From Paragordius varius (lineage: Eukaryota > Animalia > Nematomorpha): a DNA stretch of 64,000 bases. Of this stretch, positions 9,201 to 64,000 are shown in pieces. The notes under the pieces are model-generated. The model was not told the DNA's origin, made no database searches, and saw nothing but the letters and a program-made list of their open reading frames with translations. The position numbers were made by a program, and so were the translations under genes. The number at the start of each line of letters is the position of its first letter. Position 1 is the stretch's first letter. The stretch is taken from assembly GCA_964247055.1 (NCBI GenBank), contig OZ176050.1:14446001-14510000 (forward strand), given 5' to 3'.

Positions 9201-10990
9201 AAAGGCAAAATCCAAATTTATGCTGAGTGGCGGCTAATAAAAAGCTTTTCTTTGAACTTCTTTACTTTATAATATATATATCCATGTACTTTGCAAACCA
9301 TAAATTTTTTTAAGTACATTCTGTGTTTATTGCCAAACATAAAAATCTAGCGTCCAAAAAAGTTAAACTTTCTTATAGTTAAACATTAAATTCTTTACTT
9401 ACCCATTGACGATTTTGTAGTTTTATTTTTTGCAGTTTAAACATTTAAAGCTAAAATATTAATTTAAAAACCATTTTTTTTGAAAAGAAATTTGGTTCTT
9501 AACTTTCAAATTGGACGATATGCACAATAGCTTGTTAAAGTATACATAATATGTTAAATTTTTGGTTTCGTAACCATATAGTGTGAGTTAAGGACACCCC
9601 AATCCGATAAAAATTTGCGATCAAACGCCCATTTAAATGCAACGAAAAAAAAACTGTCAACAACTGATTTGCGACATTTAAAATTATTATTATATAATGT
9701 AAAACTCTCGTATTCATTTTAATAATAATAGATGCTAAAGAAATTAAAAAGCTTTAGATTAAAAATACATTGCTAATTTAATTTAAAAAAATTGGAGTTT
9801 AATCAAAAATTATATTATCCGAAATGGACCAATAAACAAAAAAAAAACCAAAAAATATCAAAGCAGTCGCGAAGATATGAATGCGTATAGGACACTCCTG
9901 ATTCAAAGATATATTTTATTGTTTGATATAAGCTAATTTGTAAATATTTATATAACAAACTACATTTTATATTTAACTATACAGTTTGGTTAACACATGA
10001 TAAATTATATTAAAAATTATAATTTATTTAATATTATGTGGGTAGATTTTTATGTTGCCCTCTCATACCTCTAGTAAAAAAAAAACCAGGCCAAAATAAA
10101 AGCTGTAAAAAAGATTTTTATTAATTCTCAATTCCTCTCTTATTTTTAATAAACTAGCTATAATTATGCTTTATGTGAGCTCGTTCGGCTAAAATCCTAT
10201 ATCAGTTTATTATATGTGCTATAGTTCAAACTTTATATTTATAAATTTTACCCAATTATATATGTTTTAGTTAATCTCAAATATTAAGTAGTACATTTAG
10301 GCGTTGTGTGTTCGGTTAAAATGGTAGAAGCAATTCTAAATTTCTAAAAAACTGCAAAAATGAAAATTGATGCGATATTCCTTCTAAAGGATTCCATAAT
10401 CCTTTTCCTAATCTTTAAATCCGATTTAAATGTTAGCTATAATAATAATAATTTTAATTATTATATTTATTTAAATTAATTAATAGAAAAATCACAATTC
10501 CAATTATATATATATATATAAGATATACTTTGTTTCAAAACAATTTCATGCATTTTTATGTAATAAAATAATATTTTTTCTTATAATTAAAATATAATTA
10601 AGTCACAATTGCTAAGATTCATTGTAGTTTATATTTGTGAGGCGGGAAACGGATGTTTAATAGAAGCAAAATTAATATTTAGTAATATATTTTAATATAG
10701 ATAAATAATTTTTCAACCAACCACAATAAATGCCAAATATAAGATCAGATATATGATTTTAATGATTTTAAAATTTATCTTTCAAAAGTATATATAATAT
10801 ATAATTTGATATCTTTATGTGATTAATCCCAAATTGCATTTTTTGAATACATTTGCCATACAAAACCACAATCATCATATATTTTAAAGTAAAATTTTCT
10901 GTAAAGTGATAAAACAACTCATTTATAGAAAGTATTAATGACTATCAAAGATTTAGGGTTAAAATTTTGCCATTTTTTTCTCGTTTTTAG

Positions 10991-13228
10991 TTAGGGCATA
11001 GCTTGAATGCGTTGATGTAATTGATGAAGTTCATCCGCTATAACTGGAGGTAAATCTTCAGGTAATTGTTCCTGAAAATATTTACTAATTTCCAAGCATT
11101 CCTGTGTCCAAAAATCTTTGGGAATATCAAAGAGCGCATTGTAATCAATGGCCAAATGTTCAAGGCCTTTAAGATTTATAGAACCAGGTTTAGGGATATA
11201 ACCTATGGGTGTTTTTACAGCCACATCATCACCCCGGCAGAACCTTAGCAAACAAACACACACACATATATTTTACACTAAAAGAAATTAAAATTATACC
11301 ATTTACAGTTCAAATTTACCCTTGAACAATTCAAATTCCCCCCTTGAACAATTCATATTCACCCTTCAAATTCACCCTTGAATAATACAAGTTTACCCTT
11401 GAACAATTCAAATTTACCCTTAAACAATTCAAATTTACCCCTGAACAATTCAATTATACACGGACAAAAAACGTGTAAAATTATACCATTTACAGTTCAG
11501 ATTTACCCTTGAACAATTAAAATTCCCTCCCGAACAATTCATATTTACTTGTGAACATTTTAAATTCACCTAACAAAAAACAATTGGTTCAAACTAATAT
11601 AACTCATTATTAATATGTAATATATCTTTATAGCACAGTTTATTCTTTTTTCAGTATTATTTTAACTAAAATTTTATTTTTCAAAAATATTATAAAGTAC
11701 TGGTAATATTTAATTTCATAAAGCACACAATTTATTTGAGGGTGAATTTAGATTGTTCAAGGGTGAGATTGAATTGTAAATGGTATATAAAGACAAATAT
11801 TTTTTTGGTAAAACACAACCAACCATACCTTTTAAACCTTGGATACATTTAAATAAAACTCATTGTTTATGAAAGGTAGGTGAAAATGTATATTGGCAAC
11901 ACAATCAATTATATATTTGACAATTTTATCTAAATAATTTATATAGGATAAATCTAAGGTTTAAAAAATCAGGGGTGTCTATTGAAAAAAAATATTAATA
12001 TATTTTTACGTTTTCTCCGTATATTTTTTTTACTGTATTATTATAAACAATTTATTCAATATTAATATGGGACAATACCGAAAAATAAGAAAAAAATACG
12101 TCTTACGTATCCAATAATTATTAATAATTTAAATTAGAAATTTTTAAATAAAAAATGTTGCTATTAAAAAACAACCATTTTTGCTCGAAAATTCATTTAT
12201 TTTTAATAAGCAAAAAAAACTTCTAAAAAAAGAATATTATACGAACCATATTTAGTAAGGCTTAAACCACAACCCTTAAAGTGTTTTTTAATGGCCTTGA
12301 ATTTATTATAAATTTTTTGATGGACATATTTTATGTATAATTATTTGCAAATGTTTCATAGACAGTTATGAAATTACATTAAAAACGGATATTATACGGA
12401 CAAAACGTAAAAATATAGGGACAAATATTTTTTATTTAAATGACAACCATACACTTTTTTAAATCTCAATTTTTCTAATATGAATTATTTAATTACAATT
12501 GTAAAATATATTATTGATTATGTTACCAATATACATAAATCATTTTCATACTTGTATTTAGTTATATACATCAAGAAAATAACGATTCAAAAAGTATATG
12601 GTTGATTGTGTTTTGGTATATCGAAATAAATTCCTATCTTAATATTTTTTGGTATCCGTATAATTTCAATTTTTAGACACAACAAAAGCAAAAAAAAAAC
12701 TATAAACAATAAACCCTACCTATAAATCCAATCAACTATCCGACAATTCTCACCAAAGCCTGGCCATAAAAATTCACCAGTTTTAGCGTTTTTCTTGAAC
12801 CAATTAACGTGAAAAATGTGAGGGAGTTTACGATTAGGATACTTGCTTTTATCACCCACATCAAGCCAATGTTGAATGTAATGACCAAAATTGTAACCAA
12901 AGAATGGTCTCATAGCAAATGGATCATGCATAATCACTTTAGCTAGTAAAAATTTTTCGAAAAATAAATATTAAAATATAAAATATGACAATTACTACAA
13001 GTAATCTTTGTCAAACGTAAAAAATAAAATTAAAATATAAACTGGTTTGACAAAGATTACTTGTAGTAATCAAAATATCATAATAAATTTATATATTTTT
13101 TGCTGAATTATTGCATATAAAATATGAAAATGCAAAAATAATAATGTCATACCAATTATTACTCAAGCAAAAAAAGGCTTTGAAAAAAAAACGTAAAAAT
13201 GTATTAAAACTTATTTATCCATAAATTA

Positions 13229-13268
<40 letters not shown>

Positions 13269-16200
13269 AAGGGTAGGGTTGTGTATAAATATTAAATAGA
13301 ATCATAAATCGCATATTTGAACTATGGGATAATATAATTCCATAGCCAAATAAATATTTTACATCTGTATCTTAGCTTGAAAAAAAAAACTATCACACTG
13401 ATTTAATGATAAAACAGTAATTATTTTTCAAACAAATAACATCATTATATCAGCATCAATTTATAAATTAAATTTTTTAGCCTATATATATATCGAATAT
13501 TTTGGCTTTTGAGTGTAAAACACATCAAACAATTTGGCTAAAAACCCCGATTGATATCAATGCAATGGCAAATTTATCTCCAAACACTAATAATTTATCA
13601 GTTTTTGCGAAAATAAAAACATTATAGAACACATCAATTGAATGGTACAATTTAATTATTGACCCCTTTAATTTTTTATTAATGTTAGTAATAAAAAAAC
13701 ACTTTATTTCATATATCAATTCAATGGTGTTCATAAATCCCTCACCACCTTTAATTATTAAATATGAAATCTTTTGTTCTTAGGCGTGATGATATAGTAG
13801 GTAGGGATCGGACTCTTATATAGAGTTCGAACCCCGAAACTACGCAATTTTTTCATCATTTCTGTCAGCCCTGAATAGGCGAGTGTTAAAACCCCTTCAC
13901 ATGTCCGGATACAATTTATGTCCTTACCCTTTAAACATTAAAAAAGGAAAAAAAAGACTCTAAACTGTATTTAATCTTTTGTTCTTTGAAAAAATTATTT
14001 CTTTCTTAGTTTAGTAAGAACTAAAAAAACCCTTATGTTCAACCGCGACCTCATAAATTCCTCACCCTATTATTTAAAAACTTTAAAATTAATCTTTTGT
14101 TCTTTGAAAAAAAACTTTCTTTCTTTCTTCAAGTAAGAAATGAAAGTAAAAACCCTTTGTGTTCAAACCGCGGCTTCATAAATTCCTCCTCACCTCCATA
14201 TAAATTATTAAACAATAAATCTTTTGTTCATTGAAAAAAATCTTTCTTTAACTAAAAAAAAACCTTTGTGTTCAGCCGCAGCGGTTGTTTCACTGCGCAT
14301 GGAAGCGCCCATAAAAACGCCATGTTTCCAATCAAGCGCCGCGTAAACAAGTGGAATGCCCCCTGACGGTCTCCGCCCCCCAAAAATGATGGCAGAAATT
14401 GGAACTCCTTTTCCATCCTCCCACAACGGATCCATAATAGGACATTGTCCAGCCGGGGCACAAAACCTAAATTATGTATGTATTAAATTAATGTATGGCC
14501 ATTTACAGTTCAAATTCACCCTCGAACAATTCAAATTCACCCTTGAAAAATTCAAATTCACCTTCGAACAATTCAAATTCACCCTTGAACAATTCAAATT
14601 CACCCTTGAACAATTCAAATTCACCCTTAAACAATTCAAATTCACCCTTAAACAATTCAAATTCCCCTTCGAACAATTCAAATTCACCCTTGAACAATTC
14701 AAATTCACCCTTGAACAATTCAAATTATATACCATTTACAATTCAATTTCACCCTTAAACAATTCAAATTCCCCCTTAAACAATTCAAATTGGCCCTTAA
14801 ACTATTCAAGTTCACCACCCTAAAATAAATTATGTGTTTTTTAAGATGATTAAATATTACCTATAGTTTTTTATATTTTGAAAAAAAGAAATTTTGTATG
14901 GTAATCAAAATAATACTGACAAAATAATAAACGTTACCATAAAAATATGTTTAATTATTATGATGAGTTATATTAAACCGGGATTTCATAATTTATTTTT
15001 AGGGTAAATTTGAATTGTTCGAGGGAGAATTTGAATTGTTCAAGGGTGAATTTAAATAGTTTAAAGTTAATTGGAATTTAAAAGTGTAACAATAAAAATT
15101 TATTCGAGTATCGCAGCAATATACCAAAACGATATTGTTTTTACGCTAAAAACAGTGATTGTATTAAAATTATATTGCAAGCAATTATAATTCAGCTCTA
15201 GTTTGACAAAAATTACTAGGAATAATCGTCGAAAATTATCGATACATTTATATAATTTTCGTAAAAAATCGAAAATTCAGAATAAATTTATATAATTTTA
15301 GCTGAATTATAATTGCAATATATTAATATCAAATAATATTTTGTAAAACTCAAATAAATTTTCAAATTATGAAAGTCTCCTCGCCATTTTCCTAGAGCAA
15401 GTATTGGGAAAATGGCCACGCAGCGATATTTTAGAATAAAACTATTTTGTCTAGATATTCAATAAAAATAAATCCTTATAAACTAATTAAGGCTTAGTTA
15501 TTGTATTACCAATTAATATCTATATTTCTTACTTATTTTGCAACGCCAAACGATAATTTTATAAAAAAACATGGCTATAATTTTACTTTTTATGTTATGT
15601 CTTTAGGTTTATTGTATCATTTGATTTAAGTTTAGAATTATTAAATGAAAACTATTGAATATTTAATTTCTCTAAAATCAATCAATGAATCTTAATTCTA
15701 CTGTTAGGTTATAAAATAATCAATTAATAAAAAATACGATTATATTAGCTTTATATTGTGTCCATAAAATTTACTTATTATTTTTACTGAACAAACCAAA
15801 AATAACTCCTGTAAAGAAAATTTCCAATTCGATAAATTATTTTAAGGTCAAAACCATTCTTTGGGTGGTAATATACATTCCAATAAATTCGATTATTATT
15901 GCTGAATTTACATACATATACCCCATGACAACCATATTAATCTTATTATAATCAAAATTTACACATTATATCAAAAAATAATATCCAGAAATTCCTTGAG
16001 TAAAAAGTAAAAATTTAAATTTTGATGCATAAAAACGCACCTCGAATTCTATTATCAAAAAATATCCAGGAATACCTTGTAAAAAAGTAAAAAATTTAAA
16101 AATTCTGATAATTTTTTTTACATTTGAAAAAAAAACTGCAAAAAACGCACCTCGAATTCTATTATCAAATAATAATACCCAGAAATTCCTTGCAAAAAAA

Positions 16201-32401: not shown

Positions 32402-32655
32402 CCATTTACATTTCAAACTTACCCTCGAACAATTCAAATTTACCCTTGAACAATTCAAATTCTTAAACACTTTGAATTCACCCTAAAAATATATAAATTA
32501 GGGAATATAATCATTATGGCATAGTTTATTATTTTTTCAGTATTATATTAATTTCAAACGTTATTTTATTTTATAAAAATATAGGTATTAAAAAACACAT
32601 AATTTATTTTAGGGTGAATTTGAAATGGTAAAGGGTGAATTTGAACTGTAAATGG
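32402..32655. mobile_element. MITE family B (TATA-CCATTTACA...TGTAAATGG-TATA) with 21-bp subterminal repeats
   Basis: Clear TIRs. Further copies at 11299/11486-11783, 14499-15065, about 18975-19230, 26076-26317, 35942-36220, 37192-37450 and about 63525-63967. Confidence 0.85.
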
Positions 32656-32809: not shown

Positions 32810-35800
32810 TTAGGAATTCATCCCTGAGGGATAACAATTAACACATGGTTGAGGAGGCTGGCCAGCTAAATAGCATCTGTTACATTTCTAATATAAATAA
32901 AAGATTCGAATTTATAACTTTTAAAATTAACAAAAAAACTTAAATAGGTTTAGACACATATTTTTTTGAAAAACACATGTTAAAATATATTATTTATAAT
33001 AATTAATAATTTTGTAACAATGTTTTTCAAGGTTTTATCCAAATATGATGGGTTTTATAACCAATTTCAATTTGCTTAAAACAACAACAAAGTTTCTTAC
33101 GTAACAATGTTGATAAAAACTGTTTGTACACCGTTTGCAAACCGTACAATGATTTCTGGGATTCATATCTTCATCAAAAATGACGCCTAAGCACCAAGAA
33201 TACCTATATTTTAACAAAAATACATCTTGTCTTTAGATTCTCAAAAAAATTTTTTAACGGTTAATAAAAATCATGCAAGCACAAATATTTATGTTTTAAA
33301 AAAAATGACACCTGAAAGTAATCAAGCAAGACGGGTTAGGACATGCAATTAAACCTGGAATACAGTTTTTAAGTTGTGTGACAAAATTACAGCATGACAA
33401 TTTGACGGGCATATTCAGATGGGCTTTTAAATCTTTTATCTAATGGTCATAAATAAATTTTTAATGATGGCGTACTTTTTTACAGCAAAAAAGCTGAAAG
33501 ATATATATACATGCATTGTAAAAGATAAGCATGTATATAGTGTAGAAATTAAAATTATACAGGTAAAATGTAAAATCTAAGACAAGGAAGTCCAACACAA
33601 ATGACTTTGCGCGTTGGGTTATATTAATTTTTTTGCGTTTTTTTTTATTTACAGGTCAATTTCGAATGGTATATTTTGTAAATAATGGTAAATTTGGATA
33701 GATATCATCCACAATTTTTATTTTCTCAATTTTTAGAGTACTTTTGCGCACCAAACAAAGCATGTCGGACATCCCTGTGATCTTGAAGCAAAAATTTTGA
33801 AAAGGCAACCACACTTTTCATAACTAATATTTCATCTTAATTTAGTGTCTTTAGACCATTTATATAATTTTACATAATACTAATTTACATTTCTTTCCCT
33901 ATTTAGCATATCCCATAAGATATATTTAAAGACACACCAAACGTTTAATTAAATATGGTGGTGATTTTCAAAAAATATAATACATTTGTCTTTTAGTTTT
34001 TTACCTTTTGTCTGTCTATAATTTCAATTTTTATATCGTATACTTGATAAATATTGTGCATAAGACAAATATCTGTTTTGGCAGCTCGACACTTTTCAGT
34101 CAACGTAGAGTATTTGGGGGCGGAGTTAATGTATTTAGCCGTCGTATGTTGTTGTTCTATGGCTTCAAACATTTCTGATTGGGGAAACTCCACCTCCTAA
34201 ATATATTTAAGCAAAAATTTATTAAAACTTAAAAATTATAATTGACTCCGAATTCTAACTGTGATCTGCACTATGAGTATCGTCGTATTATTACGATTGC
34301 GCCCATGCTTTTTTTATTTTAACACAATTTATTTTAAAATGTATTTCCTTACTGTTTAAACATAAAATTTAAGTCAAGGGTAAAAAGTAGGTAAGATAGT
34401 AAATTACATCGTTGATTGGATTCGTTAACGCAGATCCAAATTCAAAGGAGTCTTCAAACGGGGCCATAGGGGAACATGGGCTATCCAGTAAACTGTTTAG
34501 GATTCCGGTATTCATGTGAGAGTTCTGAGACGAATGTCTTAATAATTTATCACAATTATTCGCACTTATTAAACTATTATTATTTTTATTCGATATTGTG
34601 GGATTAGGTTGGATAGTCAACTTATTTTTTGTGCCTTCTGACCCCAAACATATGACTTGAGAGGATGTCATTTCCTTCTGCAGTTCATTGAGGGGATTAT
34701 GACAATCTATGCAATAGCAATACCGATCCTTGGAATCATCACTTGGCTGATCGGAATCACTAAAAATATAAAATTTGTTCAAATCAAACTATAAGTGTAT
34801 ATTTAAACGGTTAAAAAATGTTTAAGTGTTTTTTCCATTTTTTTACGTCCATTTATTAATAACCTAGTATAGGGGTAATGATTTATAAACAACTATATAA
34901 TCCAAAATCTTCATTTTATTTTTACTAAAGTGAGAAAAAAGTTATTTCCACTCTCACCTTTGAAACCAGGCATCATTGGCATCAACATTCAAGGAATCGT
35001 TTATTCCTTCGTTGGGCAAATTACCATTTTCAGTGGGGGGCAATCGACAAGCATTCCCAAGCTTAATGCAGACACACCGTAAAGTTTTACAACCGCTCGT
35101 GCATTTGCAATGATCTTTTGTGAAACGATATGCCACGGCCTCTAATCGTTTCCGTTTAGCACTCAAAAACTCTTCAAAACTCGGTGTGCCATTGTTAGTG
35201 TTTATGGGATTATTATTAGGGGTAGTGATTTTAGTTTTCTTATCTTTTAACAACTGATTAGGGACAACATTTTTCGGCATATTACAGTTTTTATTGGCCT
35301 GTGTTTCCATATTTTCTTGATGAATAATTAAGGATGCCTTTGACGAGTCATAATCGTAAACTTCGGAGGCCGCAAACTCGTTCGATGTCTCATAGATGTG
35401 ACAATTATTTATTAGGCTTGTTGTTACATAGTTATTATAAACATTTTGATTTGTTTCAAAAAGATTGGCATCATTGATATAATTTGCAGTTTGTGTGTAA
35501 TTATTTAGCCCGTGATAAGCTTCAACATTGTTTTCATACAGATTGTAATTTATTTCAGTTCTCCCATCCTCACAGTTATAGTTTTCATATTCTGTGTATG
35601 AGATTGAGGGTGGATTTAAACTATGCATCTAATAAAAAATATTCAGCGTTTTTATTTATAAATCATATTTAAAATCTAAGTTCTCATTACAAAACTATAT
35701 GTTTTTCAATATTGCGCTATAAATTTTATTTAACACGCTTTAACTTTATGCTTTCAGATAGAGCAATCGCATGTTTTTAAGATAAAATGAACTAAGCAGC

Positions 35801-38800
35801 CGATAAACAAGCGTTACAACGCTGATTTTTTTTGTTTATTTATATTAAAATTTCAAAAAATTGTTTTTCATTTTATCGCTTGATCTTATAAATGTCGAAA
35901 CTTATTGAAACAAAATTGTTAGATATCAAGAAAATTATATACCATTTACACTTTGCCCTTAAACGATTCAGATTTACCCTAAAAAAATGTTTTTTTTAAG
36001 TTTAAAAACACTTTATTTATTCATATTTCTCAAAAACGAAATTTTGTTTGTAATTAAATAATACTGAAAAAATAATAAACTAAGCCATAAAGATTAATAA
36101 TCAGTTATATTAGCCCGAAAACCCAATTTATTTTTAGGCTAAATTCGAATTGTGCAATGGCGAGTTTGAATTGTTCTAGGGTGAATGAATTATTCAATGG
36201 TGAATTTGAACTGAAAATGGTATATCTAATTAGAAACGTTCCATTGTTTAACAGTGTAAAATTTTGATTGCACATTAATATAATTTTTACGTTTTGATAA
36301 TTAAATGACTGTGGACGATTTTCGGTTCCATATGCATACACACCTTGATTAAAATGGCTTGAGTGCAAATTGGCATCGGAGTTAAAAATTTTACCATTAT
36401 TCATATCATGATGTTGGTTATACACTCCCAATTTTTCCATAAATTGTTGCAAATTATGAGGGCTCTCAAATTTTATCTAAATTAAAAAAGTATGTATGTA
36501 AAGCAAATTAATATTTAAAGTTTTAATATTTTTCAAATTTTATAACTTGAGCAGATTCCATTTGTGAACCCTGAGTCATAACCTGATGTAATGTGTTGAA
36601 GAGTGTCAGAAAATAAGTTATTTGACGTGGAAGTGTTTGCACGGCATAAGCGTTATTAGTACAAAGTATGCAAAATTTTTGCAGTTCTTTATTCCTGTCA
36701 TAATGATTGTTGTATGTCTGGACATCATGCGAAAATTTTGGGCGAATCAAGATGTTGGGTATACTATTGCATGTTAACAGTATGCTTGTATCTGCAAATT
36801 TAAAGATTATTTTGGAAAGATATAATATTATTAAGCCTGAAGCCTTCCTTGATTTTTATATACCCCTTTAGCGTTTTAAAATATATTTTTATATTTTCAT
36901 AGGCACAAAAAAGAAATCATTTGCCTATAAAAGGTAATGAAATCAGTAAATTTTGTTAAATGACTCTAAACGGATCTTTGGCAAACGCATAATGTTTAAA
37001 AAATATATTAATGTGATTCACAGTTCCTGCTCTTGATTTAGGGGCTTTAGGATTAAACAGTAAATTTATTTCAATATAACATGCTTGATGGATCATTTTG
37101 AAATATTATGTGACTGTTTTTAAAACATTATCTTATTTTCGCAAATTTTAAAGTTTGATCCTGTAAACGGAGGTAAAAAATATTTAATATACCATTTACA
37201 ATTCCAATTCACCCTTAAACAATTCATATTCACCCTTGAACAATTCAAATTCACCCTAAATTTGGCTAATATAACTCATTTTTTCATATGAAATATATAT
37301 TTACAACATAGTTTATTATTTTTTCAGCATTATATTGATTTTAAAACAGAATTTCATATTTTGAAAATATTAAAAAAAAAGGAAATTTTTATTGTATAAA
37401 ACATAATTTTTTAGGGTGAATTTGAATTGTTCAAGGGTGAATTACTGTAAAATATATATTTTAAATTATTCAATTATCCTATTTTGTCTGTTTCTTAAAG
37501 TTTTAAATTTTTGAGAAAAACCGTTTTTGTATTAACCAAAAACAGTATAGTTTAAAGTAATTCCATTCGGTTCTGGTTTCTTAAACGATTTGAACTTAAA
37601 CATTTTCTATTTTTTGTTGTTTGTCGGAATTCCAAATTGTTCACCGAATAAAAATCAATAAAAATTGCAATGAAACATCCAAGGATAATTCCTTGAAACG
37701 TTCGGTAATCCAATTCATTATTATAGATGTCTTAAATATTTTATACTAATTGTATATATAAATATACACCTACATTGGAAAACAGCTATTTACCTGACAA
37801 TTTTAGGAGCTGGGTCATTGTTTTGAGATTGAATTCAATAATAGCTGAATAAATGAAGGGCGAAGCGGTATTCATGGAATTTTGTAGTGATAAATTTATG
37901 TGGGTATTTCTTGTACATTGATTTAACATGTTGTATTCATCTGCAGAATTGAGTATTAGGGGCATTTCGGCTTCTAATAAGCTATATATTATATTTATAG
38001 CATTACCACAAAGCATCATTTATTTTAAAAATAATAACTGCCTTAATAAATGTCCATCGGAATTTGTATTAAACGAATAAACTAATAAGAGGTATTTAAA
38101 AGCGTAATAATATATTTCTAATTTGGTGCAAAAAAACGATCTCAACCGTTATTAATTTGGAATAGTTTTTTTACCCCAGAGTAAAAATAAATATCAATCA
38201 AATTATATTTAATAATGGAATTTTGGAGTATTAAATACAGCACAAACTGTAAATCTTAATATTTAACTTTACGCCACATATTTACAGGTTTTCTATTGAA
38301 AGATAATGCTTATATGGTTATTTTTTTATTAAAAACTCAAGGCACTAAAAACCCCAAAACGTATTCTTGAGCTTCAAAAAATATTTTTCCTTATTTTTAT
38401 TAAATACAATTTTTATTTACCTTTTATATCGTTATTAAATGGGAATAAAAATGGTCCAATATTTAGAAAAATTTGTGTGCAAAACAAAATTTATTTATCC
38501 AGTGTTATTGTATAAATTTGTAGATGATTAACTAGTTTTAGAGGTAAAAAATATGAGTGACACCCTAACTCAAAACCTGATGTTCTATTCTCGAAATTAA
38601 ATTTGTTCACATAAGTCTAACGACATTTACAGACCTTAAAGTGGGTGAGTATCTGATGACAAATTGGGTATATTTGATAGTTTGCTCATTAATGTAATGT
38701 ATATCCGTGTGCTGTTGTTCCTGTTGTTGATTTTGTTGATGGTTATAAATAATAAGATCATTATATGCAGAATGGCAACCGTAATTGGAATTCGTATGCG

Positions 38801-41800
38801 GAAGATTGCTAAAATTCCCCAACAGGATTTGATTTGTGAGAAATGCTGTTTTATCATAACTGGCCTCTCCGATTCGAAGGCTTTCAAACGCTATCTCAAA
38901 ACATGCACTATTTTCGTTTCCCACAAAATCCTTGGGCGTCCCATAATCGTAATCGTAATTAGTTAAAAGATTGGAAGGATGGATATCAATTTGCGCTGGA
39001 TCTTGGTATCCATCAACCTTATAATAGAAAGATCAACCATTTAATATATAATATTGTGGAATCGTTTTTACCATAATAAATTCAGTAATGTCACTAAATT
39101 TATGAAAAAAATGCAAGTTATAATGGTTCACAAATTCACCAGACTGTCTACTACGCCTCTTCCATTACCCGTTGAAAAATAATGAATGTCATGGCTAGTA
39201 GGAAAGGCATGCGCTTATATCTTAAGAAGCCCTTATGCGTCGAAAGGGTTAATAATGCTTGACACTCTGATGGCATCTAGGGGTACTCGTCTTTTAGGTC
39301 AATTTTTGTAAATGTTAGACCTTCGCATATTTTTGACACCAACTCATCAAACGTATGAGTTATGTGGGAGTCTTCTTGTAAGCACTTATTAATAGGTCGC
39401 TGCATATAACTAATCCATTTGTTTTAAGTACATTACATGTAGGCGTGGCCCATGTCACAGGTCATTTACAAAAATTAACCTAAAAGACGCGTATATCCCC
39501 AGATGCCAGTTGCAGAGGAGTGTCAACCATTATTAACTATTTCGAAACACAAAGGTTTTTCAGATATAAACCTGTCTTTTGTACTTGCCACGGCATCCAT
39601 CATTTTTCAACGGGTGGAACAGGTGCTAGCTGACAGTCCGGGAACTTGTGAATTTTTAGATCACGTTCTAGTGACTATAAAAACGGAAACTGAACACATA
39701 AACAATTTATTTAAAAAACGTATTAAGTCGGCTTGATATGGTCGGATTCAAGTTAAGACATAATAAATTAATGATAGGGGCAGAATTAGTGAACTATTTA
39801 GGGTTGGAAATAACAAAAACGGGTATAAACCTGTGGAAAAAATCTAGGCAAGAAAGAAATAAAGGCCTGTGGATACAAAATTAGATTTTAAGGACTTTTG
39901 ACATTTCATAAACGATTTAAACCAAATTTACAATTGATAGTCGGTCCTTTACATGCATTAGTAAAAACGAATGGGACTTGACAGAGAAAAATGAGAATAT
40001 CTGGAAAGCAACTAAGAAATTGTTGAGCGAAAAACTGTTTATACCACATAATCCTAGTAGGGAGTGCATCTGAATTAGGATTTAAGGGTATTTTAAGTCA
40101 TAAAGTCAAAAGTAAAAGGGTACCGATCGCGTATGCCTCTCAAAAATGTAACTACGCCGAACGGAACTACTCCACTATTGAAAAAAATTAAAAGCAATGT
40201 TGTTTGCACTAGAAAGTTTCATAGTCTTGTGTATGGTAGTAAAATGTAATATTAATGGATTTTTTACCGCTAGTAGAGTTAAGTAACAAAGATCGAAACC
40301 TAAAAGAAATAAAAAATGCTAGATTGTTTAGATGGTTAAATAAGATAAATATTAGAGATAAATCACCAAAATAAAGCTCAAAATAGAGCCGATTTAGATG
40401 ACGAGATCGATGCTAAGTGGTTACCCGATACCTGAGAATTTATTTTGTCATAACGTGCGGTTAAGCAGAGATGAGATTAAAAATGAAAACGCGTTAGATC
40501 CTAAAAAAGTATTCAAATCGTTAAACAACCATGACTGGTCCAGAACTAGAAAAGTTTGTAAACCGTTAAAGACAAGTTGGCATCTCAATATAGACTTGTT
40601 AAGTGTAAATAATCGGATTCTTCCAAAGCCCTTCCCCCTAAAAAGAAGTGGGTGCGATGCCTACACAGCGGTCATAACAACGTAGAGACCATGAAAGCGA
40701 TGGCCAGATTTACGTATTATTGGCCAAAACTAGAAAGAGACGACCTGGTAAAAGCAAGATGCGAAGCATGCCAACGTAGTTGGTTAAATGTACCCCAGAA
40801 TTTTACCTATCAATGGGATCAAACTGTTGCTGTATTGGAGCGGCTGCATATTAATGTACCCGGATGACAGTTATTATTGGTTGTTGATAATTGATAGCGC
40901 CTCCAAATTAGCAGAAATGTTTATTGTAAAAAAAGTACTGCAGCGAATGTAATCCACAAACTAGGAGAAACTTTTGCAAGGTTTGGATTTCCTAGATAGA
41001 TAATTCTGAAAATGCGTCGTAATTTAACAATTAGTATTTTTCAACCTAAGTAAGTTAGGGGTGAAACATATTAAAGTTGCCCTCTACCATCCTAAAAGCA
41101 ATAGGATGGTAGAAAGGTTATTAAATATGTTAAAAAATAAATACAAGAGAAAAATATATAGCGCTATATCCACCCTCAAAACTCTTAACAGTAGCCTATA
41201 GGCGCAACTCTATACACTGGACAACTAAAGAAACCCCGGCTCAATTAATGTTGAAACGAGCACTCCATATCTCCTAACCTGGTTAAATGGTAGAGCGAGA
41301 TTATTAGATACGCCGGCCCCTGACGTCAGTTTTCGATTAATGACCCAGTAATCAAAAAGGACTAAGTCCACGTTGGCACGCGTGAGAGATCCCTGATCAT
41401 ACAGGGCTATTTACCTTCAAAATGTGGGACAAAAATCGAGAGAAACTCGTAAGAAAACACGCCCATCAAATCATACAGCAGCCACATCAGGAATTAACTA
41501 CATCAAGCAACACCAAATGTCGTAACCGCTGAAACTCAAACAGACGAAATCATCAACACCAATGACGAAACCGTTGCATTGAATACCGAGATAACCTCGA
41601 TATCAAACAATAGTAACAAAAGTATTGATAATCCAAGATATCAAGGAGGCAACCACAGCCAGCACCCGATGTAAAGACGTTACCCTTCGAAAACACATCA
41701 GAAACCCGTTCCGTTAAAAGAAAAAAGTGATGTTATAGTTTATAACCTCAAGCACTCATTTAATAATATGGCACTTTACATTTATAAAATGTATACATCT

Positions 41801-44800
41801 ATTAATTGAATATTTAGTAGTAACATCCCTTTTGAATACTTTATACCAGCATGATAGCCTTTTGTGATATAACTTTTTGTATTTTTAATAAATAACCCTA
41901 TTTTACAAAAGATGGTTAGTTGTTTTATTTTTTTAATGGGTCCAATTTTACCTGTAATTGGTAACCATTATATATATTAATAATACCTGTTGATTAACAT
42001 TCCAATGTACAACCCCATTTTCGCAATACTTATTAACATTGGAAAACGGTTTCTCAACGCCATTCAAATTATTTTGGGTTGTTTGAAGGTTTGTTCCGTT
42101 CTTGCTGTTTGGTTTTGATTCTACTGATTTACTCAAGGCCTTTGATAACTTTTGTTTGACTTTGACTTCTTCCCTTTTGTTGGCCATTTTATGTTGTTTG
42201 CTATCAGTTGTGTTGTTTGCCAATGTGTTTCGTATTTTATTCCCAGTAAAATCATAAGCACTCCAAAAAGCCGTTTCCCTTGATTGTAAATGAAGGCTGT
42301 CTTGGTCTTCAGATGGATTAGAGGCATCCGTCATAGCGGATGAAATCTGTGTGGAAAATACGTCACTTGATAACTGGGTGTCCTCAGTTTCAACTGAAGT
42401 AACACTATTGATTGAACATGAGTAACTGCTCGGCTTTTTGTGATCATTGCTGACAATGGGATCAAAATTGTTAATAAACGATGTTTTTGCCAAATTTTGT
42501 CCAAAACTGTCATTGCCATGTTTTGCGGTGTTGTTGCTTGTAATTGATTTGCGTAGTTTTTTATTTTTTCCTTTGGTGGCTCTATTAGATTCTGCCAATA
42601 ATAAGGAGAAATATTAATCTTTCCAAAATTAAAATAAAACAGATTATTAAAAAAATCAACAGCTTAATATTTAAACTTGTTCCATTCGTATTGCATTCAA
42701 TATCATTGAAAGATCCGACCCCACAATTCTGCATACTAGGTTCTGACACTTGAGGGGCCATATTGGTATAATTTTTACTCTTGTGTAACGAATTTCTATG
42801 GTTACTTACGGCAGTGTTTCCATTATCCCGGGCAGTTGATAAAAGCTCTTTAACTGTTAACCGTCGTGCCTTGTTACATGTGTTTAGGAGTGTAGTAGAT
42901 GGTGTATTATTTGGCAATGTTGTATAGGTCTTTGCATTATAGCTACTATTTGGTCGATTATCTGCCAAATTAGATAAGTAAAAATCGAAATTATACGGGC
43001 AAAAGGTAAAAATATATGGATGAAATTTTTTTTAAAAAAATAACCATATAAATCTTAATCCCATAAAAATATTTAATTACAATCGTAAATAATCATAATT
43101 GATTGTGTTACCAATTTACATTTCTAAATTATACTTTGGAGTTAAAAACAATATTGTATTTTAAAAAATCAAGATTTAGAAAGTATGGTCGTCTAAAAAA
43201 TATTTTTGTCTTTATATATTTACGTTTTGTCCGTAATTCCAATTTTTACCGTAAAATTTCGACATATTTTTTACAATTTCATTCCAAAAAAAATTGAAAT
43301 AGACTACTAAAATTCATGGCTGTCATTCAAGCGTTTTTATGCTTTAGGCAATTCTATATTACCGATAGGGTGATTGTTTTACAAACAAAAAAGGGTGTTA
43401 CACGAAATATAAGAAATAAAATCAGAAAACCAAAAGGCGACAAACAGCTGATTGTTCTTAAATTAAACCGTTTAAATTTCGCAGTATATAAATAAATTGG
43501 TCAAAAAATAATACCACAAAACATATTATAAAACTTATTGTTGTATGATATAAAATTATGCAACTCTGATTGAATAATGTTACTTGCATTCCGCAATTCA
43601 CCCAAACTTTAAAGATGAATACAGGCTAGCTATTTTTGCTTACAACTGTACACAAACAGTATTTTCTTTTACATTCGTTATATAATTTTGGCAGAATATA
43701 TAGAAAACGCATTTTATGGGTTGCTTATTTTACACTATAGTTGGGAAACTATGAAAAACATTGTAAATTGTACCATCATATACAAAGCAACAGTTTTATG
43801 ATTTATTTAAACTTATTGATATCACAGTATGCCGTTGGTTAATTGATAGTACAGTAACGTATGATATTTTACAAATTTTGTCTATAATTTAATAAAATTT
43901 ATTGCCGTGTAAGATAGGTGAAAAATGTAATTACAACCATTTGTTTTTTGTTTAACACACTACTGTATTGCCAATTGCCGATAGTTGAATGGTTAAAACT
44001 GATAAACTCAATAATACTGTAAATTCCATCATTGGTTAATCCAAAAACAAATCTGCGCATTTTTTCCATTTTATTCTTAATTATTAAGATTAAAATTAAA
44101 AATCGCTTATTATATTTTCTTTTTTTTACCGGATTTATCACTTCGCGATATTACAATTCTGAGGATTTCAGCACCGATAATATAAAATGCAATAGACATA
44201 GTTTTTTTTTCAAATCGTGATATATTAAATGTAGAATGGAAACATTCTTATAAATTACCCGACATATTTAATCAAAAAATCCTGATAATAATGACATACC
44301 GAAATCCGTATTGTATTCAAAGCTATTCATAGTTTGATTTCTTTGTTGTTTATATGTTAGGGCGGCAGAATCTTCCATATTTGAATGGCACTCCTTTATC
44401 CTTAGTAAATCATTGTTTCCATTGGAATAACCGTTTGAAAGAACTCGCATAGTATCTTCTAAATACGGTTTATTATCACATTGATTGGAATATGTTCCAG
44501 TATTCTGACTACTGGCTTCTAATTGATTTAATAACAACATTGTGTTAATATTGGTTTTGTGAAGAGACGAAATTCCATTTATATTATCATCATTACTTTG
44601 AGTTTTATGGGAATAATAACTGTCCTTGTGTAATATTTCACTGGAAAACATGGTATAGTCTGCGGGCTTGGCGCCATTAACTTCGGAATCAAGGAGGTTT
44701 GGAAACGTTGGTATCATAAAATCACTCATATAATCTTGTCTTGCTTGAGTGTCGTTATAATTATTTACATGACCCATTTCCGGTTCCAAAGATTTTTCAC

Positions 44801-45347
44801 CTTCTCGTTGCTGATGGCAACCACCGTATTGACTGTGATAATTTGGTTGAATTATTCCGGTGGAAGTGGAATTGTTTGATAAATAGCTCTCCTCTCCGGT
44901 ATGCCCACCTCCCAAGATATCATCCAAAAACATTTCGTTAATGTGCAATTCATGATTCTCGACAACAACATTATTGTAATTTTCTGTGCTGGCAAAAGTT
45001 AAATTTTTCTTATTTACGCCTCCGTATATATGGTTGGACGCTGAAAAATCTGTCAGAGGTTTTATCAAGGGCATTAAAAGAGTGTCAGAAGTCGTTCTGG
45101 ATAAATCATTAGAAAATACGGGATTTGTAAGAGAATGTCCATTAAATTTATGCAGAAGGGGTGGTAAACTATTATCAGTGTCAATGTGTCCAATATTAGG
45201 GCCATTATGAAAATTGGCCGGAGGTTTCTTAAAATTAGAGTTAGTTTCACTGCTAGAGGAATGAGTATTCCATTGTTGAAACGCTAACTGATATTGCGAT
45301 TGAGTAGTTATGTAATTTAAAGGCTGACAATCATTAGTTCCGTCCAT
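32810..45347 (-). CDS. Uncharacterised about 1,513-aa protein: long Asn/Ser/Gln-rich low-complexity N-terminus plus C-terminal tesmin/TSO1-like CXC and multi-Cys zinc-ribbon module
   Basis: 14 exons: 45347-44300, 44246-44130, 42961-42677, 42591-41987, 39017-38635, 37981-37794, 36791-36547, 36476-36291, 35628-34958, 34759-34408, 34196-34044, 33439-33312, 33203-33101, 32887-32810. All 13 junctions are GT-AG and phase-compatible (4542 nt, no internal stop). Cys motifs: CKCTSGCKTLRCVCIKLGNAC...YCYCIDCHNPLN; ICLMHNI; KLSCC; CPNPSC; YSWC; NHCTVCKRC; QHCYKCNRCYLAG; PCVNC. The 3' exons are the best supported; the join across 41986-39018 could instead be a boundary between two genes. Confidence 0.72.
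39420..41907 (+). mobile_element. Decayed Ty3/gypsy LTR retrotransposon (RT-RNase H-integrase), 5'-truncated, in an intron antisense to the host gene
   Basis: RT fragments FTKINLKDAY / QMPV...FQRVEQVL...FLDHVLV (YxDD decayed); RNase H SASELGFKGILSH...PIAYAS...AERNYSTIEK; integrase zinc finger LHSGH...YYWP...CEACQ and core YHPKSNRMVER. Domain order is RT-RH-IN. Many stops and frameshifts. Confidence 0.9.
41731..41907 (+). repeat. Putative 3' LTR of the gypsy remnant
   Basis: Follows a purine tract (AAAAGAAAAAAG), starts TGTTATAG, contains AATAAA near its end and ends TTTTACA. No matching 5' LTR is visible. Confidence 0.5.
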
Positions 45348-51580: not shown

Positions 51581-52741
51581 CTAGCGTATATTTGGGAAAT
51601 ATTTGCAAAAGTTTTTATCACAAAACATGTACACAAAGATGACAAGGGTGTAATAAGCCGTCTCCAACATATCAGAGAAGTATATGACTGATATGTTTAA
51701 GATTTTTTCCCGGGCAGCTATAATAATTGTATTTGGAACTTGACACACGCAATAGAAGGCAAAGAAAATAAGTGTAGACAAATCTTTCTTTATGTATGCA
51801 TTGATTGCGATTGATTTTTTCGTTTTACGTTCATGTATATGCTTAATACCCACGCAAGTTTTAGTGTTGTTAGCAATGGCGAAATTCGCCATTGTCTTTT
51901 TTTTACGAGCCAAGCGAACTAAATTTGCCGTTCGACATCCATAATATATGACCGCTATACCCGGGATGATGGATAAGAAGCACATTCGGACTATATCATA
52001 AATGGTGACCCAGTTTTTTTCAAAAATTTCATCTAACACATACAGGGTTTGATGGGCATATGGTATCCATTTACCAGCCATTTCATCTCTCCAGATGTAT
52101 GTCATTTTATGGCACGTTTCTACGCGATACCAAAAATTGCTGGAAAAGGAAAGGGCGATCGTAATCAATGAACAAACCCAAGGGAGGTAAAATTTAATTT
52201 TCTTTCGCTTGGCATCAGAATGGATTAGGGAATAGGGTAGCAATGGGTTTGCCAATGATAAAAACTGGTCTCTTAACATTAGGGCAAGAGTAACGGCTGA
52301 TGCAGAGACTAAACCATTGACAAACATAACTGTCACATACGTCGATATGATCCAATTTCGGTTGGGAAAAAGGGGACCTCCTCCTCTCATATGCGTTAAA
52401 ATAGTACTTACGCTATTATGTAAACGACAAGCACAAGTTATCCAATTATACCAGATCAAGCATGTCAGGTAATAGTAATACCATCGAGTTCCAACTTGGT
52501 TCATGTTACGACGAATTCGCCCTAAAATCCAAAGACCCAGCGAATTGCCCACCAAACCGGTAAAGAGTAATATGGGTAAAACTACGACAGTTATAGCGTT
52601 TGTTAGTACCCGTAAATCAGTGCTAAATATTTCATGTGACACATTGACAGAACAATTATAAATGGTGCTTTTGGTAAGGTTTCCGAGGCCTAGCTTTGTG
52701 AATAAACCATCATTGGAATCTGAATCGTTTGGAGCCGACAT
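51581..52741 (-). CDS. Divergent rhodopsin-class (class A) GPCR, peptide-receptor-like, intronless, 386 aa
   Basis: Seven hydrophobic segments. TM1 PILLFTGLVGNSLGLWIL; TM3 end LMLRDQFLSLANPL (E/DRY position); TM5 FLSIIPG; TM6 FYCVCQVP; TM7 YYTLVIFVYMFCDKNF. N-terminal N-glycosylation sequons (NDS, NLT, NCS, NVS). Confidence 0.88.
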   Translation of the reverse strand: MSAPNDSDSNDGLFTKLGLGNLTKSTIYNCSVNVSHEIFSTDLRVLTNAITVVVLPILLFTGLVGNSLGLWILGRIRRNMNQVGTRWYYYYLTCLIWYNWITCACRLHNSVSTILTHMRGGGPLFPNRNWIISTYVTVMFVNGLVSASAVTLALMLRDQFLSLANPLLPYSLIHSDAKRKKIKFYLPWVCSLITIALSFSSNFWYRVETCHKMTYIWRDEMAGKWIPYAHQTLYVLDEIFEKNWVTIYDIVRMCFLSIIPGIAVIYYGCRTANLVRLARKKKTMANFAIANNTKTCVGIKHIHERKTKKSIAINAYIKKDLSTLIFFAFYCVCQVPNTIIIAAREKILNISVIYFSDMLETAYYTLVIFVYMFCDKNFCKYFPNIR

Positions 52742-63082: not shown

Positions 63083-64000
63083 GTACTCTATATATACATT
63101 TTAAGTCCTGTTTTTTTAGTTTAAATACTAAGTTTAAAAGTAGCTAAAGTACACACATTAAAAATTAAATTATGTACAACAAATGTGAAAACTAAAGACA
63201 TATAAATTGGTTATAAATTCGTATATAAAAATAAATAAATTTCTTGAAACAAAAAATGTATGTTTTATTAAATTTTTTAATATTTTATATGATTGAAACA
63301 TAAGGCGTATAATCCGAATCCTTTATTATTTAACATCTATACTAACAGTTAAAATTAATTTATCTATAAATTAAAACTCGTCTTCAAAATCTTAAAAGAC
63401 AAATGTTTTTTAGTCTCTTACCAACAATTCAAATCTCTATTCCTTATTTTGCAAGTTTAAACGATAAGTTATAATCAAAAATTCAGGGTTTAATATATGG
63501 TCATGTTTATTAAAAAATATATTTAACATTTACCCTCAAACAATGCAAATTCGACTGCGAACAATACAAATTCACATTTGAACAATTAGAATTTACCCTA
63601 AAAATAAATTAGGTATTTTTGGGCTATTATAACGCCTTATCAATATGAAATATATCTTTATGGCTTAGTTCATTATTTTTCGGTATAAATCTTAAACAAA
63701 AGTGTGAATTTCAATTGTTCGAGGATGTAATTTTTTAAGGTGTTAATTCAAAGGTAAATTATAATTATTCAAAAATTAATTTGAATTATATAAGGGGGAT
63801 TTATGAATTGTTCGAGAATGATTTTGAATTCTTTGAAGGTAAATTTGAATTGTTTAAGGGTGAATTTGAAATGTTTGAGGGTGATTTGAATTGTTCGTGG
63901 ATTTGAATTAATGATAAATATACAGGTGAATTTAAATCGTTTAAGGGTAAATTTGTAGTATAAATGGTATAGCTTTCACATTTTGCCTGTATACTCTATT

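What the first reader, a model, noticed from the sequence alone, without database searches (positions are those of the whole stretch)
32810..35628. Hidden multi-zinc module: a CXC domain split by insertions and fused to a CxxC/HC-rich tail, at the end of a 1,500-aa disordered protein
Seen: the ORF track misses three small exons (33439-33312, 32887-32810 and the true ends of 33203-33101) that splice in frame onto the larger exons. The C-terminus reads CKCTSGCKTLRCVCIKLGNAC-(43 aa)-CYCIDCHNPLN...ICLMHNIYQIKDLKAHLNMPVKLSCC...NCIPG..ACPNPSC...YSWC...PRNHCTVCKRC....QHCYKCNRCYLAG...PCVNC. Established: nine-Cys CXC/CRC domains (tesmin, LIN54, MSL2) bind three Zn ions and DNA; canonical spacing between Cys6 and Cys7 is about 3 residues, not 43. 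Inference from memory, not a search: this ordered pattern (CXC-NPLN, CxxxNI, CC, YSxC, HCxxCxxC twice, CxxC) resembles small uncharacterised Cys-rich proteins in bacteria and scattered eukaryotes. Here it would be a little-studied metal-binding module attached to about 1,000 residues of N/S/Q-rich sequence typical of transcriptional or chromatin regulators.
Basis: partly seen in the sequence, partly recalled or inferred. Interest (0 to 1): 0.75.

Follow-up and report, generated by a model that had tools for sequence, protein, structure and literature searches.

The report
Split CXC plus conserved zinc tail
The last six exons of a horsehair-worm-like gene encode a real, conserved but unnamed cysteine-rich module, a DNA-binding-type CXC domain pulled apart by insertions plus a second zinc-finger-like tail, which also occurs compactly in an annelid; it is a modest new domain family, not a routine known gene.

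Summary
Six minus-strand exons (35628-34958, 34759-34408, 34196-34044, 33439-33312, 33203-33101, 32887-32810) join in frame through GT-AG introns.

- **Splicing support:** a 34-aa exon search of 1.84 billion proteins found three relatives. One is a Gordionus (Nematomorpha) protein that reads continuously across junctions 3/4, 4/5 and 5/6. All six exons lie in the same order in the Gordionus locus, with pN 0.20 against saturated pS.
- **Compact form:** Capitella teleta ELT99491.1 carries the same module unsplit. The Cys6-Cys7 spacing is 3 aa there, 12 in Gordionus and 43 here.
- **What it is not:** it is single copy. The genome's LIN54-, RCHY1- and ZCCHC4-like loci lie elsewhere.
- **Family status:** no Pfam model matches any member. 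The tail's ligand spacing equals the DHHC-type cysteine-rich core, but reads YQHC, and the similarity is weak.
- **Unsupported or unverified:** bacterial relatives were not found. The 1,500-aa upstream model is plausible but unverified.

Likely function (inferred): a nuclear multi-zinc DNA/chromatin-binding module.

The parts
34958..35628 (-). Exon E1. It holds an N/Y-rich low-complexity stretch, a conserved basic patch (AKRKR...AVAYRF), CXC Cys1-6 and the first 29 aa of the insertion.
   Evidence: AG at 35630-35629 and GT at 34957-34956. Its C-terminal 48 aa are 81% identical to Gordionus L004:7698-7841.
35047..35109 (-). First half of the CXC domain, Cys1-Cys6: C-x-C-x3-C-x4-C-x-C-x6-C. Lys and Arg sit at the positions of MSL2 R526 and R543.
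   Evidence: The role of the MSL2 residues is from PMC4248295. The positional equivalence is my own pattern alignment.
34720..35046 (-). The 43-aa acidic insertion between Cys6 and Cys7, which is interrupted by the E1/E2 intron (34957-34760).
   Evidence: The same loop holds an intron and 12 aa in Gordionus, and 3 aa with no intron in Capitella.
34408..34759 (-). Exon E2. It holds the last 13 aa of the insertion, CXC Cys7-9 with HNPLN (34719-34687), then about 93 aa of low-complexity linker.
   Evidence: It matches Gordionus L004:8321-8425 and Capitella residues 267-281.
34044..34196 (-). Exon E3. The linker ends here with the conserved DICLMHNIYQ that starts the tail.
   Evidence: The motif and the junction position are conserved in Gordionus P0001 and Capitella.
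33312..33439 (-). Exon E4, the tail core with CC, C-IPG and CPNPSC. This is the zinc-ribbon-like part that was modelled with the best confidence.
   Evidence: 51% identity to Gordionus; E 2e-5 to Capitella, 7e-11 to P0002. pLDDT is 79-90 for the equivalent Capitella residues.
33101..33203 (-). Exon E5: YSWC, NPRNHC-x2-C-x2-C-x4-YQHC. This is the DHHC-type cysteine-rich-core-like stretch.
   Evidence: It is single copy in the genome. It is 79% identical to Gordionus and 52% to Capitella and P0002. It gives weak matches to ZDHHC9/5 and hhalign probability 54% to an own-genome DHHC enzyme.
32810..32887 (-). Exon E6: x-C-x2-C-x9-C-x2-C, then the stop codon.
   Evidence: It is 80% identical to Gordionus L004:11246-11305. 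An equivalent unannotated exon lies at Capitella L005:8075-8155.
36105..45347 (-). Probable upstream exons of the same gene. These are same-strand ORFs of 359, 127, 216, 105, 77, 75 and 115 codons, 32-40% N+S+Q+T. Retroelement debris lies in the large intron at about 39.1-40.9 kb.
   Evidence: The junctions were not verified. No Pfam domain was found, and there was no match in the 10 kb upstream of the Gordionus gene.

Best explanation
The region is the 3' end of a single-copy host gene of a nematomorph-like animal.

What it encodes. The C-terminus is a conserved, so far unnamed bipartite zinc module.
- The first part is a single tesmin/MSL2-type CXC domain with nine Cys, expected to form a Zn3Cys9 cluster.
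- The second part is a tail of about 110 aa with about 15-16 conserved Cys/His, enough for about four further Zn.
- The tail has a zinc-ribbon-like core (CC ... CPxxxC ... YSWC). Its end reads HC-x2-C-x2-C-x4-xxHC-x2-C-x2-C-x9-C-x2-C.

How it is stretched. In Capitella the module is compact. In nematomorphs an intron lies in the Cys6-Cys7 loop, and the flanking exon ends encode acidic low-complexity sequence there (12 aa in Gordionus, 43 aa here). A second insertion of about 140 aa separates the CXC from the tail.

Inferred mechanism.
- The insertions loop out and the zinc clusters still assemble.
- The CXC N-terminal half contacts DNA. It keeps Lys and Arg at the MSL2 R526 and R543 positions and is preceded by a conserved KRKR patch.
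- The tail is a structural zinc domain for a second nucleic-acid or partner contact.
- The long N/S/Q-rich upstream part acts as a regulator or scaffold region.

Shown: the exons, their conservation, the collinearity of the module across phyla, and what the gene is not. Inferred: zinc binding, DNA binding and nuclear role.
For: - Exon model in frame with GT-AG introns.
- E5 alone retrieves three relatives from 1.84 billion proteins, at E 6e-11, 3e-4 and 7e-4.
- Gordionus CAK9300799.1 reads continuously across the E3/E4, E4/E5 and E5/E6 junctions.
- All six exons are found in order in the Gordionus locus.
- Nucleotide similarity is confined to exons, with pN 0.20 against pS 0.94 over 161 codons.
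- Window exons E1 to E5 match Capitella ELT99491.1 collinearly, at residues 241, 267, 295, 307 and 351.
- The last exon is conserved in Capitella DNA.
- The module is single copy in the genome.
- The MSL2 CXC uses its N-terminal half, with R526 and R543, for DNA contact (PMC4248295).
- The ligand spacing is identical to the DHHC cysteine-rich core.
- The tail core is modelled as small beta hairpins with pLDDT 79-90.
Against: - There are no transcripts of this species.
- The E2/E3 junction has an alternative.
- The Pfam TCR model does not score the CXC of any member, not even the unsplit Capitella one.
- A 43-aa loop inside a Zn3Cys9 cluster is unprecedented to my knowledge, and it might disable the cluster.
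- The AlphaFold models are poor outside the core. The CXC part has pLDDT below 30, and no PDB fold reaches Z above 3.6.
- Capitella has Asp, not Arg, at the MSL2 R543-equivalent position.
- The function is entirely inferred.
Confidence: 0.55

Rival explanations
1. The tail is a derived, soluble relative of the DHHC-type cysteine-rich domain (or of RBR RING2 / CTCHY-type fingers). It would keep a reactive Cys (xQHC) and act catalytically, for example as a thioester or acyl carrier, rather than as a structural or binding domain.
For: The spacing HC-x2-C-x2-C-x4-xxHC-x5-C is exactly that of DHHC enzymes. The only PDB sequence hits of the profile that fall on this stretch are ZDHHC9 and ZDHHC5, at E 3-5. 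hhalign against an own-genome DHHC enzyme gives probability 54% and E 1e-4 over 21 columns. Weak structural neighbours include RBR RING2 domains.
Against: - The Asp-His dyad of DHHC is absent: YQ here and in Gordionus, AQ in Capitella, DL in P0002.
- There are no flanking membrane helices.
- The Pfam DHHC model finds 16 loci in this genome but not this one.
- The first CxxC of the DHHC core is reduced to one Cys.
- All similarity scores are below significance.
Confidence: 0.1
2. The module is a domesticated piece of a transposon protein. CxC-type zinc domains accompany several eukaryotic transposases. It would now be fixed as a host gene.
For: CXC-like domains of the form C-x-C-x2-G-C-x-T-x-R-C-x-C occur in transposon ORFs (from memory, not tested). 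The phyletic pattern seen so far is patchy. Retroelement debris lies in a nearby intron.
Against: - It is single copy here.
- No transposase or integrase domain is found in any same-strand exon.
- Intron positions are shared between nematomorphs and Capitella, at E3/E4 and E5/E6.
- The exons are under strong purifying selection.
- The retroelement pieces are on mixed strands inside an intron.
Confidence: 0.08
3. It is a divergent orthologue of a named gene: LIN54/tesmin, MSL2, RCHY1 or ZCCHC4.
For: It has a CXC pattern with MSL2-like Lys and Arg. HC-x2-C-x2-C repeats also occur in RCHY1 and ZCCHC4.
Against: - A LIN54-like locus with two CXC domains is on contig C5.
- The RCHY1-like locus is on C2.
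- N6-adenine methyltransferase loci are on C3 and C5, and the C5 one has its own zinc tail.
- No RING, methyltransferase or second CXC is found in this gene's exons.
- hhalign against the RCHY1 and ZCCHC4 pieces gives probability 3% and 1%.
Confidence: 0.04
4. The insertions have inactivated the module. On this view the gene is decaying, or only its disordered part matters.
For: The 43-aa and roughly 140-aa insertions lie inside and between zinc-binding segments. The CXC is not recognised by Pfam.
Against: All candidate ligands are retained. The exons holding them are the best conserved parts against Gordionus (79-81% aa identity) although synonymous sites are saturated. There are no frameshifts or stops.
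Confidence: 0.06

Closest known systems
MSL2 CXC domain / tesmin-TSO1 (CRC, Pfam TCR PF03638) domains
   Same: It has nine Cys in the order C-x-C-x(n)-C-x4-C-x-C-x6-C-...-C-x-C-x2-C followed by (H/K/Q)NP. It is a single copy of the domain, as in MSL2. Lys and Arg sit at the positions of the MSL2 DNA-contact residues R526 and R543 (PMC4248295).
   Different: The Cys6-Cys7 loop is 43 aa here, against 2-3 in the canonical domains. The Pfam TCR model scores no member of this family. There is no RING (MSL2) and no second CXC (LIN54). The domain is always followed by the extra zinc tail.
DHHC-type cysteine-rich domain of protein S-acyltransferases (PF01529)
   Same: The ligand spacing is identical: P-R-x-HC-x2-C-x2-C-x4-xxHC-x5-C. 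Weak profile hits to ZDHHC9/5 and to an own-genome DHHC enzyme support this.
   Different: The DH of DHHC is replaced (YQ, AQ or DL). There are no transmembrane helices. The first CxxC is incomplete. An extra C-x2-C ... C-x2-C follows. No Pfam match is found.
CTCHY zinc finger of RCHY1/Pirh2 and the C-terminal zinc fingers of ZCCHC4
   Same: It has tandem HC-x2-C-x2-C units ending in a further Cys/His pair. A YS-x-C ... FD-x-D lead-in resembles the genome's own RCHY1 exon.
   Different: The spacer between the units is 6 aa, against 9-11. There is no CHY, RING or methyltransferase domain. hhalign probabilities are only 3% and 1%. The zf-CHY model does not hit this locus.
Capitella teleta ELT99491.1 (UniRef R7U741, 'Tesmin/TSO1-like CXC domain-containing protein') and Gordionus CAK9300799.1
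   Same: They carry the same module, collinear from the CXC to the last C-x2-C. Intron positions are shared at E3/E4 and E5/E6.
   Different: The Capitella module is compact (Cys6-Cys7 is 3 aa, CXC-to-tail linker about 17 aa) and its public model lacks the last exon. The Gordionus public model is truncated to the last four exons. Neither is characterised.

Membership tests
Tesmin/TSO1-like CXC (CRC; Pfam TCR PF03638) | Nine cysteines in the canonical order and local spacing (C-x-C-x3-5-C-x4-C-x-C-x6-C ... C-x-C-x2-C) | tested here: met
   Read from the sequence. The same holds in Gordionus and Capitella.
Tesmin/TSO1-like CXC (CRC; Pfam TCR PF03638) | Short (2-3 aa) link between Cys6 and Cys7 | tested here: not met
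   The link is 43 aa here and 12 aa in Gordionus. It is 3 aa in Capitella. The own-genome LIN54-like gene has 2 aa.
Tesmin/TSO1-like CXC (CRC; Pfam TCR PF03638) | Score above the Pfam gathering threshold | tested here: not met
   No hit on the exons. A whole-genome scan hits only contig C5. There is no hit on the unsplit Capitella protein at E up to 10. The window's domain could only be scored as two halves.
Tesmin/TSO1-like CXC (CRC; Pfam TCR PF03638) | Zn3Cys9 cluster and DNA binding | not testable with these tools
   This needs metal analysis and EMSA. The model of the CXC part had pLDDT below 30.
LIN54 / tesmin orthologue | Two tandem CXC domains | tested here: not met
   There is one CXC here. 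The two-CXC locus is at G000:C5:8919879-8924044.
MSL2 orthologue | N-terminal RING finger upstream of the CXC | tested here: not met
   No RING is found in any same-strand upstream ORF, scanned ORF by ORF. Small unlisted exons could be missed.
ZCCHC4 orthologue | N6-adenine methyltransferase domain (PF10237) in the same gene | tested here: not met
   PF10237 hits only C3:3122990-3123537 and C5:11809279-11809866. The C5 locus has its own HC-x2-C-x2-C tail.
DHHC S-acyltransferase (PF01529) | DHHC catalytic motif | tested here: not met
   The motif reads YQHC here and in Gordionus, AQHC in Capitella and DLHC in P0002.
DHHC S-acyltransferase (PF01529) | Pfam model match and flanking membrane helices | tested here: not met
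   The genome has 16 DHHC loci, none of them here. There are no hits on the exons or on relatives. The protein ends 25 aa after the motif, with no hydrophobic segment.
DHHC S-acyltransferase (PF01529) | Zinc-ligand spacing HC-x2-C-x2-C-x4-xxHC-x5-C | tested here: met
   This shows resemblance of the zinc scaffold only.
RCHY1-type CHY/CTCHY zinc finger (PF05495) | zf-CHY model match, with RING downstream | tested here: not met
   No hit is found. A genome scan hits only C2. hhalign against the own RCHY1 exon gives probability 3.4%.
Transposon ORF | Multiple copies and a transposase, integrase or RT domain in the same ORF set | tested here: not met
   DNA, exon and profile searches of the whole genome find this locus only. 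No such Pfam domain is found.

The most novel reading that the evidence does not exclude
The CXC-plus-tail unit is a distinct, ancient domain family binding about seven zinc ions. It would be conserved across protostome phyla (Nematomorpha and Annelida, with likely Rotifera and Nematoda clusters) and perhaps present as stand-alone proteins of about 155 aa in environmental microbes. Its tail would be a soluble sister of the DHHC cysteine-rich core. Together they would show how a Zn3Cys9 cluster tolerates a 43-aa loop, and possibly where the DHHC zinc scaffold came from.
Probability: 0.2. Interest if true: 0.65.

Novelty: new variant of a known kind. Interest (0 to 1): 0.45.

Why it matters
- It defines a conserved cysteine-rich module that no Pfam model covers. 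Public annotations truncate it: the Gordionus model lacks the CXC exons and the Capitella model lacks the last exon.
- It offers a natural experiment on how much loop a Zn3Cys9 CXC cluster can carry, with 3, 12 and 43 aa in three species.
- It shows a soluble protein with the exact zinc-ligand spacing of the DHHC core but without the catalytic dyad. This is a lead for the origin or diversification of that scaffold.
- In practical terms, it shows that exon-by-exon searches can rescue small Cys-rich exons that ORF tracks miss in AT-rich animal genomes.

Tried and rejected
- Pfam on each of the six exons and on seven upstream ORFs gave nothing meaningful.
- PDB sequence search with E5 gave nothing. 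With the profile A2 it gave only E above 0.3. With the Capitella protein it gave nothing.
- ESM Atlas with E5 was uninformative.
- All three word-index protein searches found no further relatives: E1 region, Capitella region 236-395, and profile A2. The length filter and the need for exact 5-mers limit these searches.
- The search for related loci with A2 in prokaryotic genomes and JGI metagenomes gave pattern hits, but none was confirmed.
- My own degenerate NPRNHC-x2-C-x2-C DNA pattern gave 12 and 20 hits. All were out-of-frame chance matches with stops nearby.
- A profile search of 401 genomes of the phylum of an Anaerolinea-labelled MAG (taken to be Chloroflexota) had a best E of 0.01, which is chance level.
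- Both AlphaFold models had low overall confidence (mean pLDDT 63 and 42). Foldseek and VIA-align found no fold above E 1.8 or Z 3.6. These results say nothing about fold novelty.
- Alignment A3, with exon fragments, misplaced the first CXC half onto the tail and was discarded.
- The LIN54, MSL2, RCHY1, ZCCHC4 and transposon readings were rejected, as listed under the membership tests.
- A bacterial promoter/terminator scan of the 3' end was irrelevant.
- A second look-up of earlier findings by words was not available.
- The joined spliced protein was not submitted to any search or fold tool.
Full report
**Setting.** The window is G000:C1:14446001-14510000 of a 110-Mb, roughly 25% GC eukaryotic assembly. 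The best relative of the gene studied here is from Gordionus sp. (Nematomorpha). This agrees with an earlier scan note that the animal is probably a horsehair worm. No contig handled here looked human.

**Observation.**
- On the minus strand, six exons each follow an AG and precede a GT: 35628-34958, 34759-34408, 34196-34044, 33439-33312, 33203-33101 and 32887-32810.
- Their phases (0/2/0/0/2/0) keep one frame for 494 codons, ending at TAA 32812-32810.
- The 43-residue gap between Cys6 and Cys7 consists of 29 aa of E1, one split codon and 13 aa of E2.
- Only five stop-free 34-codon windows with six or more Cys exist in all six frames of the window, and two of them belong to this gene.

**Are the exons real?**
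I did not submit a joined protein to any tool.
- Exon E5 (34 aa) against 1.84 billion representative proteins gave three hits. P0001 is Gordionus CAK9300799.1 (135 aa, 79% identity). P0002 is 105 aa, from an 856-bp ENA metagenome contig. P0003 is Capitella teleta ELT99491.1 (395 aa, match near its C-terminus).
- In the Gordionus locus L004, tblastn finds all six exons in the same order and strand. E1's C-terminal part lies at 7698-7841 (81% identity), E2 at 8321-8425, E3 at 10028-10099, E4 at 10419-10523, E5 at 10963-11064 and E6 at 11246-11305.
- Nucleotide similarity between the two species is detectable only inside exons. Over 161 aligned codons, pN is 0.20 while synonymous sites are saturated at pS 0.94.
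- This is purifying selection on coding exons in two deeply diverged lineages.
- The weakest junction is E2/E3, where a second phase-0 donor exists at 34656.

**The insertions.**
- Capitella carries the whole CXC in one exon, with 3 aa between Cys6 and Cys7.
- Gordionus has an intron in that loop and 12 aa. The window has the intron and 43 aa.
- The CXC-to-tail linker is about 17 aa in Capitella and about 140 aa here.
- So a compact ancestral module has been stretched in nematomorphs by low-complexity sequence added at exon ends.

**The module.**
- Window exons match Capitella collinearly: the CXC first half at residue 241, the second half with NPLN at 267, CLMH at 295, E4 at 307 (E 2e-5) and E5 at 351 (E 5e-14).
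- The public Capitella model stops by reading into an intron. An exon with a strong acceptor at L005:8075-8155 supplies the missing x-C-x2-C-x9-C-x2-C end.
- Cys/His conserved across the four sequences number about 15-16 in the tail, in addition to the nine of the CXC. That is enough for roughly seven zinc ions (inference).

**What it is not.**
- The Pfam TCR model finds a two-CXC LIN54-like gene on contig C5, but not this locus.
- The zf-CHY model finds an RCHY1-like gene on C2.
- PF10237 finds methyltransferase loci on C3 and C5, and the C5 one has its own HC-x2-C-x2-C tail.
- The DHHC model finds 16 loci, none of them here.
- The exon DNA, E5 and the family profile A2 each hit only this locus in the genome, so it is not a repeated element.
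- No Pfam family matches any exon, any upstream ORF or any of the three relatives.

**Closest known motifs.**
- The CXC has the MSL2/tesmin Cys order.
- The MSL2 CXC contacts DNA through its N-terminal half, using R526 and the minor-groove Arg R543 (PMC4248295).
- By my own pattern alignment, the window and Gordionus have Lys and Arg at those positions, and the insertion lies after this half.
- The end of the tail has exactly the DHHC cysteine-rich-core spacing (HC-x2-C-x2-C-x4-xxHC-x5-C). The Asp-His of DHHC is replaced by Tyr-Gln, and an extra C-x2-C ... C-x2-C follows, as in CTCHY or ZCCHC4 fingers.
- The only PDB profile hits on this stretch are ZDHHC9 and ZDHHC5, at E 3-5.
- hhalign gives probability 54% (21 columns) to an own-genome DHHC enzyme, against 3% and 1% to the RCHY1 and ZCCHC4 pieces.
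- These are resemblances of a zinc scaffold, not memberships.

**Structure.**
- The AlphaFold model of the Gordionus tail has mean pLDDT 63. The model of the Capitella protein has mean pLDDT 42, but 79-90 over residues 310-360, the CC ... CP ... YSWC core, which forms short beta hairpins.
- Foldseek and VIA-align gave only weak zinc-ribbon, RING2 and SBP-like neighbours, with Z at most 3.6.
- The fold is therefore undetermined.

**Distribution.**
- Confirmed members are two nematomorphs, one annelid and one unidentified metagenome eukaryote.
- The ESM Atlas lists, as unverified leads, an unnamed 155-aa cluster (score 0.90, TM about 0.5, labelled mostly Bacteria on 7 records), a 213-aa rotifer cluster and a nematode 'CRC domain' cluster.
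- Direct tests found no prokaryotic member. These were pattern and tblastn scans of one genome per species and of JGI metagenomes, and a profile search of 401 genomes of the phylum of an Anaerolinea-labelled MAG, taken to be Chloroflexota.
- These tests are narrow, so the result is 'not found', not 'absent'.

**Upstream part.**
- Same-strand ORFs of 359, 127, 216, 105, 77, 75 and 115 codons, with 32-40% N+S+Q+T, lie between 36105 and 45347.
- The nearest one ends in phase 0 at a GTAAA donor, and E1 begins in phase 0 after a pyrimidine-rich AG.
- In Gordionus the E1-like exon continues upstream without a Met.
- A protein of about 1,500 aa is plausible, but I did not verify those junctions.

**Verdict.** This is a real, conserved, unnamed multi-zinc module in a single-copy host gene. 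The bacterial link is unsupported, and the function (a nuclear DNA/chromatin-binding module) is inferred.

Noticed in passing
window 11309-11773, 14509-15056, 32412-32645, 37202-37426, 63701-63957: A 21-bp tandem unit containing AGGGTGAATTTGAA occurs 45 times, against about 1 expected. It is arranged as inverted arm pairs, like a foldback or MITE-type element. One copy sits just 3' of this gene's stop and others sit in its introns.
   Followed up: partly
window ~39151-40900: Gypsy/BEL-like pol (RT/integrase) ORF fragments lie on both strands in inverted arrangement, inside the large intron of the gene.
   Followed up: no
L005:8075-8155 (Capitella teleta KB306824.1): The public model ELT99491.1 reads into an intron after QHCP. 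It misses a last exon encoding x-C-x2-C-x9-C-x2-C, which is preceded by a strong acceptor.
   Followed up: yes
L004:4400-8425 (Gordionus OX940785.2): The public model CAK9300799.1 (135 aa) is truncated. The conserved exons with the basic patch, both CXC halves and an E1-like N-rich exon lie upstream of it and are not annotated.
   Followed up: yes
window 34656: An alternative phase-0 GT donor lies inside E2. Joined to the E3 acceptor, it would drop about 83 codons of the low-complexity linker. The consensus is weak and the site is untested.
   Followed up: partly
L048 (G000:C5:8919700-8924200): The genome's LIN54-like gene also has introns inside both CXC domains, but at different positions. 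One example lies after YCECYE, between Cys5 and Cys6.
   Followed up: partly
window 51581-52741 (-): A 386-codon intronless ORF has a seven-transmembrane-receptor look. It was not examined.
   Followed up: no
P0003 residues ~90-215: The N-terminal part of the Capitella protein is modelled, at low confidence, as beta strands plus a helix. It has weak Pur-alpha/PC4-like neighbours (Z 3.0), which may be chance or a mis-joined gene model.
   Followed up: no
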